Source of the DNA: Anaeramoeba ignava BMAN
Taxonomy: Eukaryota; Protista; Anaeramoebae
DNA length: 64,000 nucleotides
Direction: 5' to 3'
Assembly (NCBI GenBank): GCA_028826165.1
Contig: JAPDFW010000068.1
Coordinates: 62,001-126,000, forward strand
The position numbers and the translations under genes were made by a program. Positions 50,526 through 60,496 of the stretch are shown piece after piece (positions within the stretch are counted from its first letter, which is position 1; each line of letters starts with the position of its first letter). The notes below the pieces were generated by a model. That model was not told where the DNA came from. It saw only the letters and a program-made list of their open reading frames with translations, and did no database searches.

Positions 50526-53500
50526 TCAAATTTTAAAATTTCCTTTTAAAAGAATCCATTCAATAACATCAATTAATAAATCAAACTTAAATTTTTTTGC
50601 AACTTGAAGAACTTGAAGAAACTTATCAACAAAAAATTGCCTATCAAAAGAGAGAACAAAATGGGAATTGTCTTCACACAAATTTGAAAGAAGACGACTT
50701 TTAGGCTTTTTACATTTGGCACACTTAAGATCCTGTATTTGGAAAGCGAGAAATTGATTCTGAACTTGGTTGAGCAAATTACTTTCAATTTGGAAATTAT
50801 TATATTGATTTCCGCAGCTTGGACAAGACCAGAAACCATCGGAATCTTGGGGTTCTCTGCTTAGATCGAGATCTCGACACATTGAGCAGGATAGACAAAA
50901 GAGATCATGAACAAGAAGAGGAGTTGCAGGATTTCGAAATTTTGTTTCAGGTGAAAAATCACTGAATGAAATTGTCTGAAGTAAATTGCGCTTGAGTAAA
51001 CCCGCTGCGTCTTCAGCATCTCGCAGCATGGAAAGCGTGTGGCATAGATACACAATGAACGAAAGAATCGATCCTGTTTTTTCGTTTTCTTGAGCCAAAT
51101 GAGCCGATGTTTTGAACTGTGATATTGCATGAAAGGCTTGCTCTGTTATTTGTGTCTTAATGAGATTCTCTGAGAAGTTATTGACTGGATTCGTTTCTGT
51201 TCGCTTCTTGTGTTTGCTCTTCTTGTGGTTGCGTTTGTTTGATTGCAAAATTTCTTCAGGAATCGAAAGTGGATCTTCGCGACATTTGTAAATGAACATT
51301 CGTGTTTCCACAAGGAAAGAGTTGAATGATTGAAAGGAAGGAGTCTTTCAGAATAGGTGGGAGATGATCCGCAATTTGCCAAGACGAGGTTGGACTGTTT
51401 GTGTTTTCAATGCTGATATATGATGGGGAATTTTGTGAGGAATTTGGCTGTTCTTGAAAACCAGAAAAATTGAATTCGTCTAAAAAAAGCAGATGAGACC
51501 AAGTTTGGACAGGAAGAAAATCAAGATAACGGAACTCATCTTTTAAATGAACCGTTTTGATAAGCGAATCGATATAACTGCGGGTTTCTTCAGGAGATGT
51601 TCTTGGACAATTAATGAGCACTTTGTAGAAATTTGCAAAAAGAATTTTTGCATCAAGAGCTTCGAATTCTTGGACAAGCATGTGGAAATTCTTGTGGATA
51701 AGATCTGATACAAAACGAAGAAGCGAGGGATCATGAAGAGAGGATTGAGTGGATTTGAGCCAACGATAAAAATTGTTCAGAAGAAGATCAGAATATTTGG
51801 AAAATGGTGAATTTGAGTCTTCAAGCCAGCTGATCAACAAATTGCGCAGTATAGAAAGAGTGGAGACATGGGCTTGTTTCTGCTGATCAAATACGCCTCG
51901 ATTAACTATTTGAGGTGTGTCAGGCAGATTCTGTGTTTTCGAATTTGCGGATGTGAAAACAACGGAATTTGACTCTGGTCCAGCACTGATTATTGAAACA
52001 ACGGGGAAATAAAGAATAGAAAGCTCTACACTATTTGTGGAGTACATCCCTTCGCCAACCATTTTGTCTGGGACATGATACTTCTCGTCCATAAATAGAG
52101 CCAAATGGTCATCGTTTTCGATCCCACCTAAAGAAGGCTTTCCTGTCCCAGAAAACCACAACAAATGGCTGCTCTTCTGCAATGCGCGTGCAAAGAGAAT
52201 GTCCATGAGAAGAATCATGTGGTCGCTGGATGAATTGCTCTGCAGATTGAGCAAAGGAACTTGGGCGTATTGTGCAAGAAAAGCGCGTTCTTCGCGGAGA
52301 GTTCTCATCTGTACAAGTTTTCCAAGAGCAGTTTGAACAGCTTCGGGCTGCCATGTTGTTCTCTTAAAAACACAAGCATCACGAGCGGAAAAGGGAGAGA
52401 ATATGCAGGGGTTTTTGGAGACGAAGGGAAGAGACTCGTAAATTGTACTTTGTTGGAGATTTTGTGAAGATATTATTCCAAGTACAGATGATTTGAGAGC
52501 TCTGAAACGTTTAGATAGGATCTTATCCGCCAAACCAAGACCAGACTCTCTTTTTTTAGCATGATGCAAGTGAAAAACGGGATTAATGTTATTGAGATTT
52601 GTGTGCGTTTTTTCCATAAGAACGCTCAAATTTTGTTGCGAAATTGTTGGTTTCGATGCTGTGATAAGGATTATATGGAAATCTGAGTCGAAAGAAACTC
52701 CTATTACTCCAACAGATCTCTCCGTGTTCTCATAAACGCAAAACATCTGCAGCTGAGATATTGTATTTGCATATCCAGTATTTGAGGAGAGACGAGCAAC
52801 AGGTGACACATCGACAGATTCTAATTCTTCGAGATCAAAGTTGGTCATATTGGTTCGTGCGCTGTGGACTCTCGATTGACGCGCCGCTCTTTTCACGCGA
52901 CAACAATTCCCAAGAGCTAAAATGCACCGAGTCTCTGCTGTGACCTCGAGCTCGAAAACACCTACAACCTCGGGACGAAGTAAACATCGCGAGATCGCCC
53001 GAAAATGGTGAATATAGTCTTCCTCAGAAATACTGCACTTGTAAACATTATGTCGCTGTTGATTACGAGGAAGAACCATTTGCGGAGATGGCTCCATCTT
53101 CATCTGTTCTGGAAATTGGTTGGGCTGTAAATTTCCTATTAGATTTAAGTAAAAAACACGAGGACATTTTATTTGAACAAACGAAATGGAATTTTGGATT
53201 GAAATCCAAACATCGACTTTTCCAGGAACATTTGACTTTAGCAAACCAAGAACAATCCAATCAGAAAAAAGTAACGCTTGTCGCGAGTCTCGTAGATGTA
53301 GTTGTCCAGAAAGACCTTTGAGGCACTGCCCCTTCAATGTACCGCTCAATACGTAATATGAGCGCTTGTGTTTTCTGATGCTCTTCTTCGGTTGTGCTTT
53401 TTGTTGTGGAATCCCAAGAAATTAATTTTTTGCAAACAAACTGGAGTTTCCAAGAATTTTGACAAAAAAGCAAAAATTCAGAATATTTTTTTTTTCGATT

Positions 53501-56500
53501 TGGGATTTTTTCGGGCATTTTCTGTAGAAGATCTTCAACAAATCTCTCTGCAGAAGAGAACGATCTAATGCTACCAAGAAGAGAAAGTGGATTTTTCTTT
53601 CCAAAAGATAATGTTGCTTGAGAACGATGAGTTGAAGATTGTGTTATTGTGGAGTTGTGATCCCAAGCTTGGGGAGATTGGACAGAATCTTCAATATCAG
53701 GAACAGTATCTTTAGAAGGAGCACGAATATAGCTGAGCATGGATCTCTGTGTAGATTTAGCCTGTGCGATGCGTCTTTTGATCCATTCAGGATGTTCAAC
53801 CTGTGGAACAGGGTTTGTGATGCCTTGAAGCGCAGCAGGGATCGTTATTATTTTCTGGATCACACTTGCAAGCCGCTGGAAATAATAATCCCAATCAACT
53901 ATAGAACGCAAATCAAAGTGGGTCATGTGCGGATTCTTGCACCAACGAGCCAAGAAATTGTTACGGATCGAAATTTCAGATTGGAATATCAAAATCGGGA
54001 TTGCTCTTTCAGCAACAGACCCGTCTTTTGGAAAGCGAGAGATAATGAATGAGCAAGATATTCCGCCTCGGTTTGTTGATGACTGCAAGATTTCCTGACC
54101 AACAAACTCAGCAAGTCTTTTCGCAGTGGTTATTGCTGTTGATTTTGACACATCATAATCTTCCAATGATCTTGAAAGGTTTCTTGTTTCGCTAATGTAA
54201 CCCAGTAGTTCTGAGTCTTCCAACCCTTCTCCGTGGGAGTAAAGAAGATCGAGCCAGGAAAGAGCAACTTCACCAACTGTGCGATAGCATTCAATCAACG
54301 TTTTACCGCGCAAAAAACTGCGAAAAATTTGGGATTGGAAAATTTTGATCAATTTAATTTCCCCGCGTCTCTTGACTTCGAATCCCTTAAGCTCAGCAAG
54401 GCTTCCATCTTGGTTAAACACTGCATACCGTTTTTTCAAGGACTCGTTTTCTTTTTTTGAAGCAGGAAGCACCATAGCTCTATAAGGTCCATCCACTTCA
54501 AAAAATATACTGCATTCTTCAGTTTTGGAATATTTATTTTCAGACTTTTTTAGTGTCTGGTATTGTCTGTTAGAGAAATTGCGCCATACATCGTAGTTCA
54601 ACATCATTCCAGGATACAATCCCCGGTGCTTCTTTGGTGGTTTCTGTTCGTTTTGTTCTGTAAACCAGAGCACTTCTGGAAAAGAGTTAGGCAATGCGCA
54701 CCAGATTCCATCCGTATTGTGGCACAATAATCCCCCAAATCCGCATACAAAATTGTTGTTCTTCTCAACACTCAAATCATATACATATTCTCCGTGTTTT
54801 TTCACCTCTTTTTTTGCTTGATATTTTGATCCAAAAGTTTCCCCAATTTTGTTCTGTTCTGTTTTTTTGTTTTTTCCTTCAATAAATTCTACGCAATAAC
54901 TTTTCCGATCTTCTTGAATGTTTTGTTTTTCAATTGATACTTGGAATCCTTGTTGCATTCCAATGACAAAGAGGTCGCAACAAAGTCCAATATTTGGAAT
55001 TTTTGTGATTTGGAAATTTTGATAATTTTTATCGTAATTTTCCAAACATCCACATTTCAAGCAAAATTTACGATAGTTTTGAATGAATATATTTTTGATT
55101 TTAGCGGTTGATGAGATGATTTCAGAAGGAATACGAAATTGTTGTGTATTTTTTTCTGATAGAATATTGAAGAAAATAGATGCAAAGAATTTGGTTTGAT
55201 TTTTATCTTGCAGAATATTAGAAAATGCTTCCTCTAATTCACTAATTTCTTCAACAGTTCTTTCTTTAAATAAATTCTCAATCACTCCACAATTTTTTTT
55301 TGGTTCTAATTTTCTTGCATTTCCAAAAGCTATTATCCAAGCTATTATTTTTGCCACATTTCCATCTACATCAATACACATTGGAATTGTGATATCTTCA
55401 TCTTTCCCGATTCTCAATCCTTCAAATTGATCCTCTGAAAAATTAATTTGATCTGTATTATAACCATTGAAATTTAAACTAAAATCACGAAGTAATAAAC
55501 AATCATAAAAACTGTCATTTTTGACAGCTCTAACGATTTTTAAGAAGAAACACTTGAGTTTTGATCGAAGTTTTTGGAATTTGGGTTCAATTTTTGGAAT
55601 TAACACAAGAAGGTTGTTTTGCGATTTGTATAACTTGGTTAAATATGGAAATAAATTGATTTTCAATAATTTTTTTTCAATAGCAGGAATTTTTTGTATG
55701 TGAGTTAATAAATGATGCTGTTTCATCTCTTTGACAATTAAATTAGAGATTGAGTGATTTTTAGGGTTATTATGGAAAATGGAATGGGAATCCGTGACAC
55801 GAACAGAGCCGAAAGATGTTTTAATCTTAGTAACTTTTCTGGAAGTTTTTTGTCTGATCACACATTTTATTTTCTGCCATTCAATTTTTCCATTTCTATC
55901 AACAGAAAGAGCAGACCAACCACCAATATCCAAACAGTATTGAACTTTTCTGTTTTGATCCAAAACAGAAACACCGAATTTATCAAAGAATTGATCGACA
56001 AATTGGCCGATCTGCAAAATGTGGATCATGTTATTTGGTGATTTTAAGATTATATTTTCTCGCCAATCGAGAGAGTCAAGTTCAAGAGGTATACCAATTC
56101 TTTCGACAAGTTGTCTTGCCTGTGTGATTATATTAGCGCCTGTTAAAGTAACTATACCAGCCATCTCCATTGAATGCCAACGAGCACCAGTTCTCATTAC
56201 ATATCCATAAAAGGAATTCAAAATGCATTTGTGTGCAAGTTGAAGTGAGTCGTATAATACAATTGATTTTGCGCATTCTTCAATCTCAATCGCTGTTCCA
56301 TGTTCAACTGCATTTCTATATTTTGATAGTGCTTGTTTAAGTTTTTCTTTGTAAATGTATCTTCGATCTCTGAATAATTTTACTGTATCAACATAAAATG
56401 GATTTTCTCTTTGACAAACAATCTCACTTTTTTGTTTTGTTACAATTTTGTGACTTTTTGAATAAACTTTTTTAGAGTAATCTGTAAGTCTTTGTCTAAT

Positions 56501-59500
56501 AATTCTAGCTTTTTCAGTCTTTATTAAGAAAATATTTATTTTTATATTAATTTTAATTTTAATTTTTTAATTTTGATTTTGATTTAATTTTAAATTGATT
56601 TTGATTTTAATTTTAATTTTAATTTTAATTTTAAATTGATTTTAATTTTTTGAATTGATTTTAATTTTAATTTTAATTTTAATTTTTAATTTTAATTTTG
56701 ATTTTAATTTTAATTTTTTAAATTGATTTTTAATTTTAATTTTGATTTTAATTTTAATTTTAATTTTAATTTTAATTTTAATTTTGATTTTAATTTTAAT
56801 TTTAATTTTGATATTGTGTTACTTCATTTAAATCTTCAAAATAAACAATCTTTTTTTCACCAGGAACATTGCTTGGAAATTTCTCTTCTTCTAATTGAGA
56901 AACAATCTGTTTATATTCTCCTTTATTTGGGAGATAAACATCGCCTCTCCAAATCCAGTCCATTTTGCGTTTACATTCATTTCTAGGATCATTATAAATA
57001 CAACCAGCACATCTCTTTTCATTTGTAATTGAAGAAGGTTGAAGTCTGTTTGTTAAAATGATATTAGGATACATAGCAGCAACGTCAAGATGATAAATAA
57101 TCGGTTTTTCTGTTCTTTTTGGATTATCCCTAAGATTCTCCAGTTTTTGGATCACATCTTCACGAACTTTTTGATAATTTTCAACTGATTCAAAAGGAAT
57201 TCTGACTTCTTTTTCAATTGAAAATTTCAGTGTGTGATCTAAATTATCAATTAAATATTGAAAAGCAGAAGGATCGAGATTAAATGAATATTCGAGATCA
57301 TTCCTGTAAATTCCACTTGAAATTGCTTCAACATGACCACCTATATATGTTTCACTCTTAAGAAGTTTTCCATCAACAAAATTCATCAGTTGTTTTTTCT
57401 TCTTGTTTGGAAATACAATTTCTGCTTCAAATCCTTTAACCATTAAAAGAGTTTCACATAATGTTCCACTCCCTTTTCGAAGAACATCATCTGGATTCAT
57501 TGGGATAATTGAACATAACGAAAAGATAAAAGGATGAACATATTTTAGATATAAATAATAAGTTGCAACTGCATCAGATACTGAGTAATTTGCTAATGTT
57601 TGTGGTTGTTCGTGTGCAAATTTTGTCATATCTTCTGGATCAATTTCAAGTGGTTCATATCCTAGTTTTGCTTTAGTAACAGCTTTTAAACCTAATTTAT
57701 TTTTATATTTGATTTTAATTTTGAATTTGATTTTAATTTTGATTTAAATTTAAATTTTAATTTTAATTTTGATTTTGATTTTGATTTTAATTTTATTTTA
57801 ATTTTGATTTTGATTTTAATTTTGATTTTAAATTTGATTTTAATTTTGATTTTAATTTTAATTTTAATTTTAATTTTGATTTTAATTTTGATTTTGATTT
57901 TGATTTTAATTTTGTTTTTGATTTTGATTTTGATTTTTAATTTTAATTTTGAATTTAATTTTAATTTTTAATTTTAATTTTAATTTTAAATTTGATTTTA
58001 ATTTTAATTTTGATTTTGATTTTAATTTTGATTTTTGATTTTGATTTTGATTTTGATTTTGATTTTGATTTTGATTTTGATTTTGATTTTGATTTTGATT
58101 TTGATTTTGATTTTGATTTTGATTTTGATTTTTGAATTTTGATTTTGATTTTGATTTTGATTTTGATTTTAATTTTAATTTTAATTTTAATTTTAATTTT
58201 AATTTTTAATTTTAATTTTGATTTTAATTTTGATTTTGATTTTATATTTTGATTTTAATTTTAATTTTAATTTTAATTTTAATTTTAATTTTAATTTTGA
58301 TTTTGATTTTGATTTTGATTTTAATTTTGATTTTAATTTTGATTTTAATTTTGATTTTGATTTTGATTTTAATTTTGATTTTGATTTTAATTTTAATTTT
58401 GATTTTAATTTTGATTTTGATTTTGATTTTGATTTTGAATTTTAATTTTGATTTTATATTTTGATTTTAATTTACCTTGACTTCCCATTGGAAGATAAGA
58501 ATCTCTTTTAACCCAACGAAAAATATCCAAATGAGGACAAAATTTACATTTAAATTCTTCTTTCAAATCTTTATAATAACCAATTTCCTGAAACATATCA
58601 ATTCCATGAAAATGTGCTCGAGATTGAACAAAAGGCCAATCAAAAAAATCACCATTAAAAGTAACAATAACATTTGGTTTAACTTGGCGAATATGGAAAA
58701 AAAATCTTTTGAGAAGGTCTTTTTCATTTTTCTCATTAAAAATATGGAATTTGCCTTCAAATTCAGGTTTTGGAGTATATTCCAAATTTTTGATATCAGT
58801 TGAAACAATCTCACGATTAACAATCAAGTAACCTTTTCCAGAAAGCATATAAGAAATCATCATAACTTGGTCTACTTGAGGATCAGGAAATTTTAAAGGA
58901 CTTTTAGTTGTTTCTATATCAAAAGCTAATATTTGCAATTCGGGTCTGTCTTCGAATTCAGAAACATGAGTTAGTATTGAATTTCCTTCAAAATAACGAA
59001 CATTGTACCAATATCCTACTCTTATTCCTGTGTCAATTGCTACCCGAATGTAGTACGGTATATCATATTCTCGAATTTCAGTTATGAAATCTAATCCTTC
59101 AATTCGGATTTTTGTTGAACTAGTTTTTTCTATTTTTTTTTGCAATTCATTCCGCACAAAAACTAAATCTTCTACAACTCTAAAGCTTATTTTAATGCAT
59201 TTTCTTCTGATTCCTGATAGATGATTTTTCTTCATTTTTCGAATTTATTTATTTTTTTTTTTTCCAATTTATAATTTCAAAAATTTTTATTTAGGGTTTT
59301 TCAGTTAAAAATTTCTTTCAGTTTTTGATTTTCAAACCAAATCAAGATCTTCTTTTTCAAGAACAACCATTTTCGATATTTTTGTTTCATATATTCTTCT
59401 AAGTGAACTTTCAACTTCGATCATTCTATCATTTTCAAATAAAACTAAAAAATATGGTTCAAATTGTAATGTTGATTTAAAAGTGCTTCCATTCTATTAA

Positions 59501-60496
59501 ATTTTTAAATTGATTTTTATTATTTTGATTTTGATTTTGATTTTAATTTTGATTTTAATTTTGATTTTGATTTTGATTTTGATTTTAATTTTGATTTTGA
59601 TTTTGATTTTGATTTTGATTTTGATTTTGATTTTGATTTTAATTTTAATTTTGATTTTGATTTTGATTTTGATTTTGATTTTGATTTTGATTTTGATTTT
59701 GATTTTGATTTTGAAATTGATTTTGAATTTGATTTTGATTTTGAAATTGATTTTGATTTTGATTTTGATTTGAATTTTGATTTTGATTTTAATTTTGAAA
59801 TTGATTTTGATTTTGATTTTAATTTTGAAATTGATTTTAATTTTGATTTTGATTTTGATTTTGATTTTGATTTTGATTTGAATTTTGATTTTGATTTTAA
59901 TTTTGATTTTGATTTTTGAAATTGATTTTGATTTTTGATTTTGATTTTGATTTTAATTTTGAAATTGATTTTGATTTTGATTTTGATTTTGATTTTGATT
60001 TTAATTTTCATTTTAATTTTAATTTTGATTTTGATTTTGATTTTGATTTTGATTTTGATTTTGATTTTGATTTTGAAATTGATTTTCATTTTCATTTTCA
60101 TTTTGATATTAAATTAGGGAATTGAAAATTGAAAATTGAAAATACTTGTTCAATAAAATAAAGATCAACTGCACTTTTTAAAATTCCTGTTTCATTTTCC
60201 TCAATAGTTGTCTTGAATATTTTTTTTTTAAATGAAAGAAAAAAGGAAGATTTAAAAATAATCTTACTAGAAATTTTATTTAAAAAATTTATTACAGGTT
60301 GAAAATTGAAAAGCCAAGCCAATCTTGGATTATAATCTTTATATTCTTCAAAACCAAAAAGAAATTCTGTTTGTTGTTCTATTTGTTTTCTAAGTTTTCG
60401 ATTTTCAGATAAATTTGTTTTATTTTTATTTTTAAATTTATTTTTAAATTGATTTTTAAATTGATTTTTATTTTTTTTTGAATAAGTTGGAAACAT
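50526..60496 (-). CDS. POLE: DNA polymerase epsilon catalytic subunit, intein-containing; about six exons, frameshifts near 53300 and 51318
   Basis: LAFDIETTK (ExoI), TFNGDFFDWPF, WVKRDSYLP, YSVSDAVATY, YHLDVAAMYPNIILTNRLQP, KCILNSFYGY, ELD/TDG, FEVDGPY, ELKGFEVKRRGE and C-terminal Cys clusters. Confidence 0.97.
54716..56074 (-). mobile_element. Intein (453 aa) in Pol epsilon at the ELD|TDG active-site motif, with a degenerate LAGLIDADG endonuclease region
   Basis: In-frame insert begins Ser (SLDWRENIIL) and has block B VRVTDSHSIF, block F YVYDLSVEKNNNF and block G LLCHN followed by Thr+1. Confidence 0.95.
57700..58470. repeat. (TTTTGA / TTTTAA)n microsatellite filling a POLE intron; similar arrays at ~56550-56810 and ~59510-60110
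   Basis: Visible arrays inside GT-AG introns of POLE. Confidence 0.9.

What the first reader, a model, noticed from the sequence alone, without database searches (positions are those of the whole stretch)
54716..56074. Intein inserted in the catalytic D-T-D motif of nuclear DNA polymerase epsilon
Seen: a 1359-nt in-frame, intron-free insert separates PLELD from TDGIW. It starts with Ser, has a TxxH block B (VTDSH) and block F (YVYDLSV..NF), and ends His-Asn before Thr. Established: these are class-1 intein splicing motifs, and motif C (YxD|TD, the pol-c site) is where Ser1/Thr+1 inteins sit in archaeal and giant-virus family-B polymerases. Nuclear inteins are rare in eukaryotes, although Anaeramoeba is reported to be intein-rich. 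Inference: the essential leading-strand replicase depends on protein splicing, and the element may have arrived from a viral or prokaryotic PolB.
Basis: partly seen in the sequence, partly recalled or inferred. Interest (0 to 1): 0.88.

Follow-up and report, generated by a model that had tools for sequence, protein, structure and literature searches.

The report
Known Pol epsilon intein, Asgard-type relatives
The main DNA-copying enzyme of the amoeba Anaeramoeba ignava carries a real, already published self-splicing protein insert; what seems unreported is that its nearest relatives sit at the identical spot in similar polymerases of Asgard archaea and of unassigned mobile-element-like DNA, which points to a later jump into the nucleus.

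Summary
Confirmed, on the minus strand: 56074..54716 encodes a 453-aa class-1 intein (S1, TDSH, block-F Asp, His-Asn, Thr+1) splitting ELD|TDG of the single Pol epsilon gene. It stays in spliced RNA: one contig skips the upstream intron but keeps the insert. It is already known: the genome is Anaeramoeba ignava, the intein equals residues 831-1283 of GenBank KAJ5074812.1, and Gallot-Lavallee 2023 lists Pol epsilon as an intein host. The scan also noted other inteins in this genome. The endonuclease is full length but lacks both catalytic motifs.

The intein is not a classical archaeal or giant-virus pol-c type, nor a copy of the Pol alpha intein. It forms a 100/96 clade with inteins at the same site in Pol-epsilon-like polymerases of Hodarchaeales (3 of 23 genomes) and of unbinned, element-like contigs. 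Splicing domains are 45% identical where host proteins are 26-28%, and A. flamelloides is empty, so homing after the hosts diverged is likelier than inheritance. The donor is unresolved. I found no paper on this link but could not read the 2023 supplement. Side lead: the unbinned polymerases branch closer to eukaryotic Pol epsilon than Hodarchaeales do.

The parts
50526..60496 (-). Pol epsilon catalytic subunit gene (single copy); AT-repeat introns in the 5' part, one long last exon
   Evidence: tblastn of KAJ5074812.1 onto the window; Pfam domains; one match in the genome
54716..56074 (-). Intein, 453 aa, class 1, residues 831-1283 of the precursor
56075..56083 (-). N-extein end of motif C (Glu-Leu-Asp)
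   Evidence: sequence; same motif in all eukaryotic Pol epsilon rows used
54707..54715 (-). C-extein start Thr-Asp-Gly; Thr+1 is the splicing nucleophile, Asp+2 is the motif-C catalytic Asp (own knowledge of family-B polymerases)
   Evidence: sequence
55784..55795 (-). Block B T94-D-S-H97
   Evidence: T94, S96, H97 invariant in six allelic inteins
55322..55363 (-). Degenerate first LAGLIDADG motif (block C): Phe250 where most relatives have the catalytic Glu (AEG)
   Evidence: no LAGLIDADG Pfam hit here, hits in relatives
55049..55099 (-). Degenerate second LAGLIDADG motif (block E): the GDG of relatives is replaced and a 3-residue insertion is present
54716..54787 (-). Blocks F and G: YVYD433LSV..NF ... 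His452-Asn453
56519..56822 (-). GT-AG spliceosomal intron upstream of the intein exon; internal control that run X2 is spliced RNA
   Evidence: table 7: X2 loose end at 56518 reads the exon from 56823
53315..53317 (.). One extra base in the assembly (apparent frameshift, assembly error)
   Evidence: table 4: all four runs lack one base here
51316..51319 (.). One extra base in the assembly (apparent frameshift, assembly error)
   Evidence: table 4: the three runs covering it lack one base

Best explanation
A canonical class-1 cis-splicing intein in the only Pol epsilon gene of A. ignava. The mRNA is translated into a precursor of about 2,650 aa. Ser1 makes an N-O acyl shift helped by T94/H97, Thr+1 attacks, Asn453 cyclises (His452, Asp433), and motif C (ELD-TDG) is rejoined. 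The motifs, frame and RNA retention are shown; the chemistry is inferred from the family. The element is a selfish passenger that cannot be lost imprecisely because it splits the active site. It arrived horizontally, after A. ignava's line split from A. flamelloides or shortly before, by allelic homing from a pool of endonuclease-bearing inteins that circulate among Pol-epsilon-like genes: Hodarchaeales chromosomes and unbinned element-like contigs (group M). The short ELD|TDG(I/V/L)W target is conserved across these hosts. Its endonuclease has since decayed, so it is now immobile.
For: Motifs and Pfam/TIGR hits. Kept in spliced RNA, no empty allele. One gene copy. Of 1.84 billion representatives, the five hits at E<1e-30 are all at this site in Pol-epsilon-like PolBs. 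Clade 100/96 in the splicing-domain tree and 98/98 full length. Identity to Hodarchaeales/M: extein 26-28%, splicing domain 45%; within Hodarchaeales the order is reversed, extein 74% and intein 57-60%; ML distances agree. Patchy: 3 of 23 Hodarchaeales-type genes have it, 20 are empty; A. flamelloides and the other 118 top eukaryotic hits lack an intein domain. Host parts upstream, downstream and C-terminal all group with A. flamelloides, 98-100. Target DNA matches at 17-20 of 24 bases in 7 of 8 relatives. Relatives keep LAGLIDADG motifs, this one does not.
Against: Splicing not shown for this intein. The A. ignava branch is long, and its place inside the clade is unresolved: AU tests reject none of the placements (p 0.08-0.35). 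Identity of splicing domains has a floor, and within-Hodarchaeales rates are inflated by homing among them, so the rate comparison is rough. An unsampled eukaryote or eukaryotic virus could be the immediate donor. How archaeal-type DNA reached the nucleus is not shown.
Confidence: 0.72

Rival explanations
1. Indirect route: the intein belongs to the same family but reached A. ignava through another eukaryote or a eukaryotic large DNA virus not yet sampled, as the 2023 paper proposes for many Anaeramoeba inteins.
For: PMC10710043 finds virus-linked clusters for many Anaeramoeba inteins. The A. ignava intein is the most diverged member and may lie outside Hodarchaeales+M (84/46). The hosts of group M are unknown.
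Against: No viral contig in IMG/VR carried a relative of the intein or an M-type polymerase (only weak generic PolB hits). Giant-virus RNA-polymerase-type inteins and classical pol-c inteins fall far away in the tree. M contigs are gene-dense and intron-free like prokaryotic DNA.
Confidence: 0.15
2. Vertical relic: the intein was in the archaeal or element-borne ancestor of Pol epsilon before the last eukaryotic common ancestor and survived only in A. ignava.
For: The intein clade is confined to Pol-epsilon-like hosts; a position outside Hodarchaeales+M is not rejected (p-AU 0.35).
Against: Needs precise loss in every other sampled eukaryote including A. flamelloides. Inteins are more alike than their hosts between groups and less alike within Hodarchaeales. 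The dead endonuclease is still full length and alignable (453 against 441-449 aa), which suggests recent decay. The intein tree does not follow the host tree even inside Hodarchaeales.
Confidence: 0.06
3. Within-genome or classical pol-c origin: copied from this genome's Pol alpha intein at the same motif, or from an archaeal/giant-virus YGD|TDS intein.
For: Pol alpha has a Ser1/Thr+1 intein at the homologous site; the 2023 paper reports transfers between paralogues.
Against: The two inteins share only one 34-residue block-B stretch and lie on opposite sides of the tree; the genome search with this intein did not list the Pol alpha intein. The nearest YGD|TDS inteins (P0033, P0191) score 70-88 bits against 138-187 for the allelic ones.
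Confidence: 0.03
4. Not functional: an RNA-level intron, an assembly artefact, or a pseudogene.
For: Two frameshifts lie downstream in the assembly.
Against: Both are one-base assembly errors absent from the runs; the insert is present in DNA contigs and in a spliced transcript contig. All splicing residues are intact while the endonuclease has decayed, as expected if splicing is under selection.
Confidence: 0.02

Closest known systems
A. ignava Pol epsilon intein (KAJ5074812.1; Gallot-Lavallee et al. 2023, PMC10710043)
   Same: It is this element: exact 453-aa match at residues 831-1283; the paper lists DNApol epsilon as a host and maps it in Fig. 5B.
   Different: The main text never mentions Asgard, Heimdall, Hodarch or Loki and names only Nucleocytoviricota homologues for the polymerase hosts. 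Its supplement and Dataset S1 were not available.
Pol-c (motif C) inteins of archaeal, phage and giant-virus family-B polymerases, and A. ignava Pol alpha intein
   Same: Same insertion point before the Thr-Asp of motif C; Ser1 and Thr+1; class 1; LAGLIDADG-type middle.
   Different: A different sequence family: separate clade, flanks ELD|TDG rather than YGD|TDS.
Inteins of Hodarchaeales Pol-epsilon-like PolB (e.g. MHA2174775.1 cluster; contigs JAHQWW010000004, JAEOTQ010000162, JBHLMN010000002) and of group M contigs
   Same: Same site, same length (441-449 aa), 27-35% identity over the whole length, 45% in the splicing domain; one clade.
   Different: They keep the LAGLIDADG catalytic motifs (one or two M members have a change in the first motif). 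Hosts lack the C-terminal half of eukaryotic Pol epsilon. The host polymerases of Hodarchaeales are described (PMC12680538, PMC12198294); I found no description of their inteins.
Chloropicon primus Pol delta and Pol zeta inteins
   Same: Nuclear family-B polymerases with inteins, reported in PMC10710043.
   Different: Other paralogues; relation to this intein not tested.

Membership tests
Class-1 intein (Hint) | In-frame insert whose removal restores a conserved host motif | tested here: met
   ELD|TDG is contiguous in 16 eukaryotic and 20 Hodarchaeales-type empty alleles
Class-1 intein (Hint) | Ser/Cys at 1, TxxH block B, block-F Asp, His-Asn end, Ser/Thr/Cys at +1 | tested here: met
   S1, T94/H97, D433, H452-N453, T+1; not class 3, as block F4 is Asp and residue 1 is Ser
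Class-1 intein (Hint) | Hint domain by profile and fold | tested here: met
   PF14890 and TIGR01443 over cut-off; fold hits are inteins, rmsd 2.4 A over 124 columns to 5o9i
Class-1 intein (Hint) | Retained in mature mRNA | tested here: met
   X2 contig joins 56823 to 56518 (intron removed) and runs unbroken through 56074-54716
Class-1 intein (Hint) | Protein splicing demonstrated | not testable with these tools
   Shown for three other Anaeramoeba inteins in PMC10710043, not for this one in the main text
LAGLIDADG homing intein (active) | Two LAGLIDADG motifs with catalytic acidic residues | tested here: not met
   Phe250 for Glu; second motif lacks GDG; no PF14528 hit, whereas relatives hit. 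It is a degenerate remnant.
Classical pol-c intein family (YGD|TDS) | Insertion just before Thr-Asp of motif C | tested here: met
Classical pol-c intein family (YGD|TDS) | Sequence clusters with other pol-c inteins | tested here: not met
   Separate clade from the main pol-c group and from Pol alpha's intein
Pol-epsilon-like ELD|TDG intein clade (Hodarchaeales + M) | Same site and one supported clade | tested here: met
   100/96 and 98/98
Pol-epsilon-like ELD|TDG intein clade (Hodarchaeales + M) | Nested within a named donor lineage | tested here: inconclusive
   AU tests reject no placement
Eukaryotic Pol epsilon catalytic subunit (host) | Exonuclease + PolB + POL2 thumb + DUF1744 + C-terminal Zn fingers; groups with eukaryotes | tested here: met

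The most novel reading that the evidence does not exclude
The intein homed directly from an Asgard archaeon or one of its large mobile elements into a eukaryote's nuclear Pol epsilon long after eukaryogenesis, and the element-like contigs that share it encode an undescribed clade of Pol-epsilon-like polymerases that is the closest prokaryote-type sister of eukaryotic Pol epsilon. That would show gene flow from the Asgard mobilome to a modern nucleus and support a mobile-element source for the leading-strand polymerase.
Probability: 0.3. Interest if true: 0.75.

Novelty: already known. Interest (0 to 1): 0.4.

Why it matters
The intein is a published item in a published list, so on its own it is ordinary for this genome. 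The added value is its provenance. An intein shared at one active-site codon by a eukaryote's Pol epsilon, Hodarchaeales polymerases and element-like contigs is a marker of DNA exchange among lineages whose host proteins are only about 27% identical. It makes cross-domain allelic homing testable, because intact endonucleases and many empty target alleles exist on the archaeal side. It also led to group M, which bears on an open dispute: whether the Hodarchaeales Pol-epsilon-like gene is inherited from the eukaryote ancestor or came from a mobile element (PMC12395588, PMC12680538).

Tried and rejected
Word-index search with the intein alone found nothing, because of the length filter. IMG/VR scans with the intein alignment and the M extein alignment found no true relative. 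The JGI metagenome scan gave one more distant intein, at LEVD|TDG of a divergent PolB next to a primase-like gene. M-type polymerases were not found in 400 Asgard genomes with a single protein or a profile; the profile did pick up the Hodarchaeales genes weakly. PHROGs and Pfam on 19 neighbours of M polymerases gave no capsid or terminase, so 'virus' is not shown. Atlas searches of an M-linked TBP and an M polymerase were uninformative on host. The GC3 step at the intein (0.15-0.17 upstream, 0.25 inside, 0.35 downstream) suggested a co-converted or chimeric 3' half; rejected, since all host parts group with A. flamelloides and GC3 varies 0.11-0.47 among genes here. The two downstream frameshifts are assembly errors. 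Origin from Pol alpha's intein rejected. Primate and other mammal-like Pol epsilon hits were left out of every comparison. The M+Hodarchaeales AU test did not finish.

Full report
Observation. The insert is real and its coordinates are exact, on the minus strand. Reading 56074 down to 54716 gives 453 codons without a stop between PLELD and TDGIW. It has Ser1, T94-D-S-H97, block F with Asp433, His452-Asn453 and Thr at +1. It passes the curated cut-offs of Pfam Intein_splicing (47.8 against 35.8 bits) and TIGR01443. Its best solved relatives by sequence and by predicted fold are inteins; the model is reliable only in the Hint part. The host has the exonuclease, PolB, POL2 thumb and DUF1744 domains of Pol epsilon, and there is one copy in the genome.

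RNA and DNA check. Four public runs were laid on 50600-56560. Run X3 has one contig across the whole stretch. Run X2, guessed as DNA by the tool, has a 7.2-kb contig whose loose end at 56518 reads the upstream exon from 56823. It therefore lacks the GT-AG intron 56519-56822 and is spliced RNA, yet it runs unbroken through the insert. No joint for an empty allele was seen, though contigs drop rare variants. The two frame breaks downstream (about 53315 and 51316) are single extra bases in the assembly that the runs lack.

It is already known. The genome has 42.8 Mb in 147 contigs. Pol alpha has an intein at YGD|TDS and Pol delta has an intron three bases after that site, the pattern described for Anaeramoeba ignava BMAN in Gallot-Lavallee et al. 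2023 (PMC10710043). That paper names DNApol epsilon among intein hosts and maps it in Fig. 5B. GenBank KAJ5074812.1 is titled 'intein-containing DNA polymerase epsilon catalytic subunit a precursor [Anaeramoeba ignava]' and holds this intein letter for letter at residues 831-1283. Earlier notes of this scan record other inteins in the same genome.

How it works. By family knowledge, a class-1 intein splices in four steps: N-O shift at Ser1, transesterification by Thr+1, Asn cyclisation, O-N shift. All residues needed are present; the reaction itself was not tested. The junction lies immediately before the Thr-Asp of motif C, so the unspliced precursor should have no polymerase activity (inference). 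From my own knowledge of yeast, the catalytic half of Pol epsilon can be deleted at a heavy cost while a catalytically dead point mutant is lethal, so dependence on splicing is likely but not proven here. The middle of the intein aligns with a LAGLIDADG endonuclease, but Phe250 replaces the first catalytic Glu and the second GDG motif is gone. Pfam finds LAGLIDADG_3 in the relatives and not here. The element is therefore probably immobile.

Where it came from. In an exhaustive search of 1.84 billion representatives, five proteins scored E<1e-30 and the next 8e-18. All five carry the intein at the same E(L/V)D|TDG site of Pol-epsilon-like polymerases. One cluster is named Candidatus Hodarchaeales in NCBI, and the GTDB scan returned two Hodarchaeota contigs and one Promethearchaeota contig as the only strong hits. 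Among 400 Asgard genomes, 23 had this polymerase: 3 with the intein and 20 with a clean empty site. The other carriers (group M: P0001, P0002, P0003, P0005, P0163, P0166, partial P0070) lie on unbinned, gene-dense contigs of 1.5-242 kb with mostly unknown genes plus TBP, RNase H, SMC-like ATPase and methylases. They were not found in the 400 genomes or in IMG/VR. I read them as large mobile elements or viruses of archaea; this is inference, as no virion gene was seen in the parts I could read.

Trees. In a 63-intein splicing-domain tree the A. ignava intein joins Hodarchaeales and M inteins at 100/96; the main pol-c group, with this genome's Pol alpha intein, lies elsewhere. Full-length inteins give 98/98. 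Its place inside the clade is unresolved, and AU tests reject no placement. The host protein is native: upstream, downstream and C-terminal parts each group with A. flamelloides, whose gene is empty at this site.

Horizontal or inherited. Within Hodarchaeales the host region is 74% identical and the intein 57-60%. Between A. ignava and Hodarchaeales or M the host region is 26-28% identical but the splicing domain 45%, and the whole intein 32% despite its decayed middle. Between M and Hodarchaeales the figures are 26% and 46-50%. ML distances show the same reversal. With the patchy distribution, the absence of an intein domain from the other 119 top eukaryotic hits and the still full-length endonuclease remnant, this favours homing after the hosts diverged. 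The target is suitable: 17-20 of 24 bases around the site match in seven of eight relatives. The intact endonucleases are on the prokaryotic side, which suggests but does not prove the direction. Caveats: long A. ignava branch, an identity floor for Hint domains, homing among Hodarchaeales that blurs the calibration, and possible unsampled intermediates.

Comparison with the literature. Hodarchaeales Pol-epsilon-like polymerases are known (PMC12680538, PMC12198294), and one author argues that they came from a mobile element or by transfer (PMC12395588). The 2023 intein paper's main text does not mention Asgard archaea. No paper in my searches held both 'Hodarchaeales' and 'intein', and related searches showed no title on this link. 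I could not read the 2023 supplement, so the link may be recorded there.

Side lead. In a 26-row, 388-column extein tree, group M is sister to eukaryotic Pol epsilon (98/96) and eukaryotes+Hodarchaeales is rejected at p-AU 0.022; a larger quick tree gave the same grouping at 87 with a long-branch warning. M proteins also hit Pfam POL2_thumb while the Hodarchaeales ones do not. The sample is small and biased to intein carriers, so this is a lead only.

Verdict. Real feature, already known; interest 0.40, raised from a low base by an apparently unreported and testable origin. Mammal-like hits were excluded from all comparisons, and no self-built spliced model was searched.

Noticed in passing
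P0001, P0002, P0003, P0005, P0163, P0166, P0070; L009, L010, L051, L052: Group M: Pol-epsilon-like polymerases on unbinned, gene-dense, mostly hypothetical contigs (one of 242 kb, Ga0393283_0000005). Sister to eukaryotic Pol epsilon at 98/96, eukaryotes+Hodarchaeales rejected at p-AU 0.022; not found in 400 Asgard genomes or IMG/VR. Possibly an undescribed group of large archaeal elements.
   Followed up: partly
window:53315-53317 and window:51316-51319: Single-base assembly errors; the GenBank model KAJ5074812.1 appears to step over both with short false introns (gaps near 53398-53458 and 51231-51295), so its sequence is probably wrong at two places in the C-terminal half.
   Followed up: yes
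window:50526-56518: GC3 steps from 0.15-0.17 in the intron-rich 5' exons to about 0.35 in the 4.2 kb after the intein; the last exon is 6 kb with no intron. Not a chimera by trees; the intron-free Pol alpha gene also has high GC3 (0.37-0.46).
   Followed up: partly
L002 (G000:C1:476151-479408): Largest subunit of an RNA polymerase with two inteins only three residues apart (QM|S..HN|TLN|S..YD|TFH); the second ends in Asp and groups with similar inteins from giant-virus-like RNA polymerases.
   Followed up: partly
L006/L007 (G000:C71, about 1012350-1013549) and L004: Pol alpha intein (395 aa, ends Lys-Asn instead of His-Asn) at YGD|TDS; Pol delta has an intron 3 nt after the same site. Both are in PMC10710043.
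   Followed up: yes
L003 (G000:C77:230571-233885): 519-aa Ser1 intein in a DEAD-box helicase (Prp5-like) at LIAT|SVAG; groups with an intein at the same motif in an archaeal-type helicase (P0051) at 100/98.
   Followed up: partly
P0164, P0165, P0169, L021-L043: Within Hodarchaeales the intein tree disagrees with the polymerase tree, and two genomes (G065, G075) plus P0003 carry another insert at motif B: homing appears active among Asgard Pol-epsilon-like genes.
   Followed up: partly
L020 (Ga0209777_10041268): Divergent PolB with a related intein at ALEVD|TDG next to a primase-like gene on a 4-kb contig; nearest outgroup of the clade.
   Followed up: no
window:50940-56231: About 24 single-base differences segregate among runs of the same sample, suggesting heterozygosity or mixed haplotypes, including inside the intein.
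   Followed up: no
window:29695-37091: About 7 kb with almost no G or C; already noted by the scan as an AT-only minisatellite intron.
   Followed up: no
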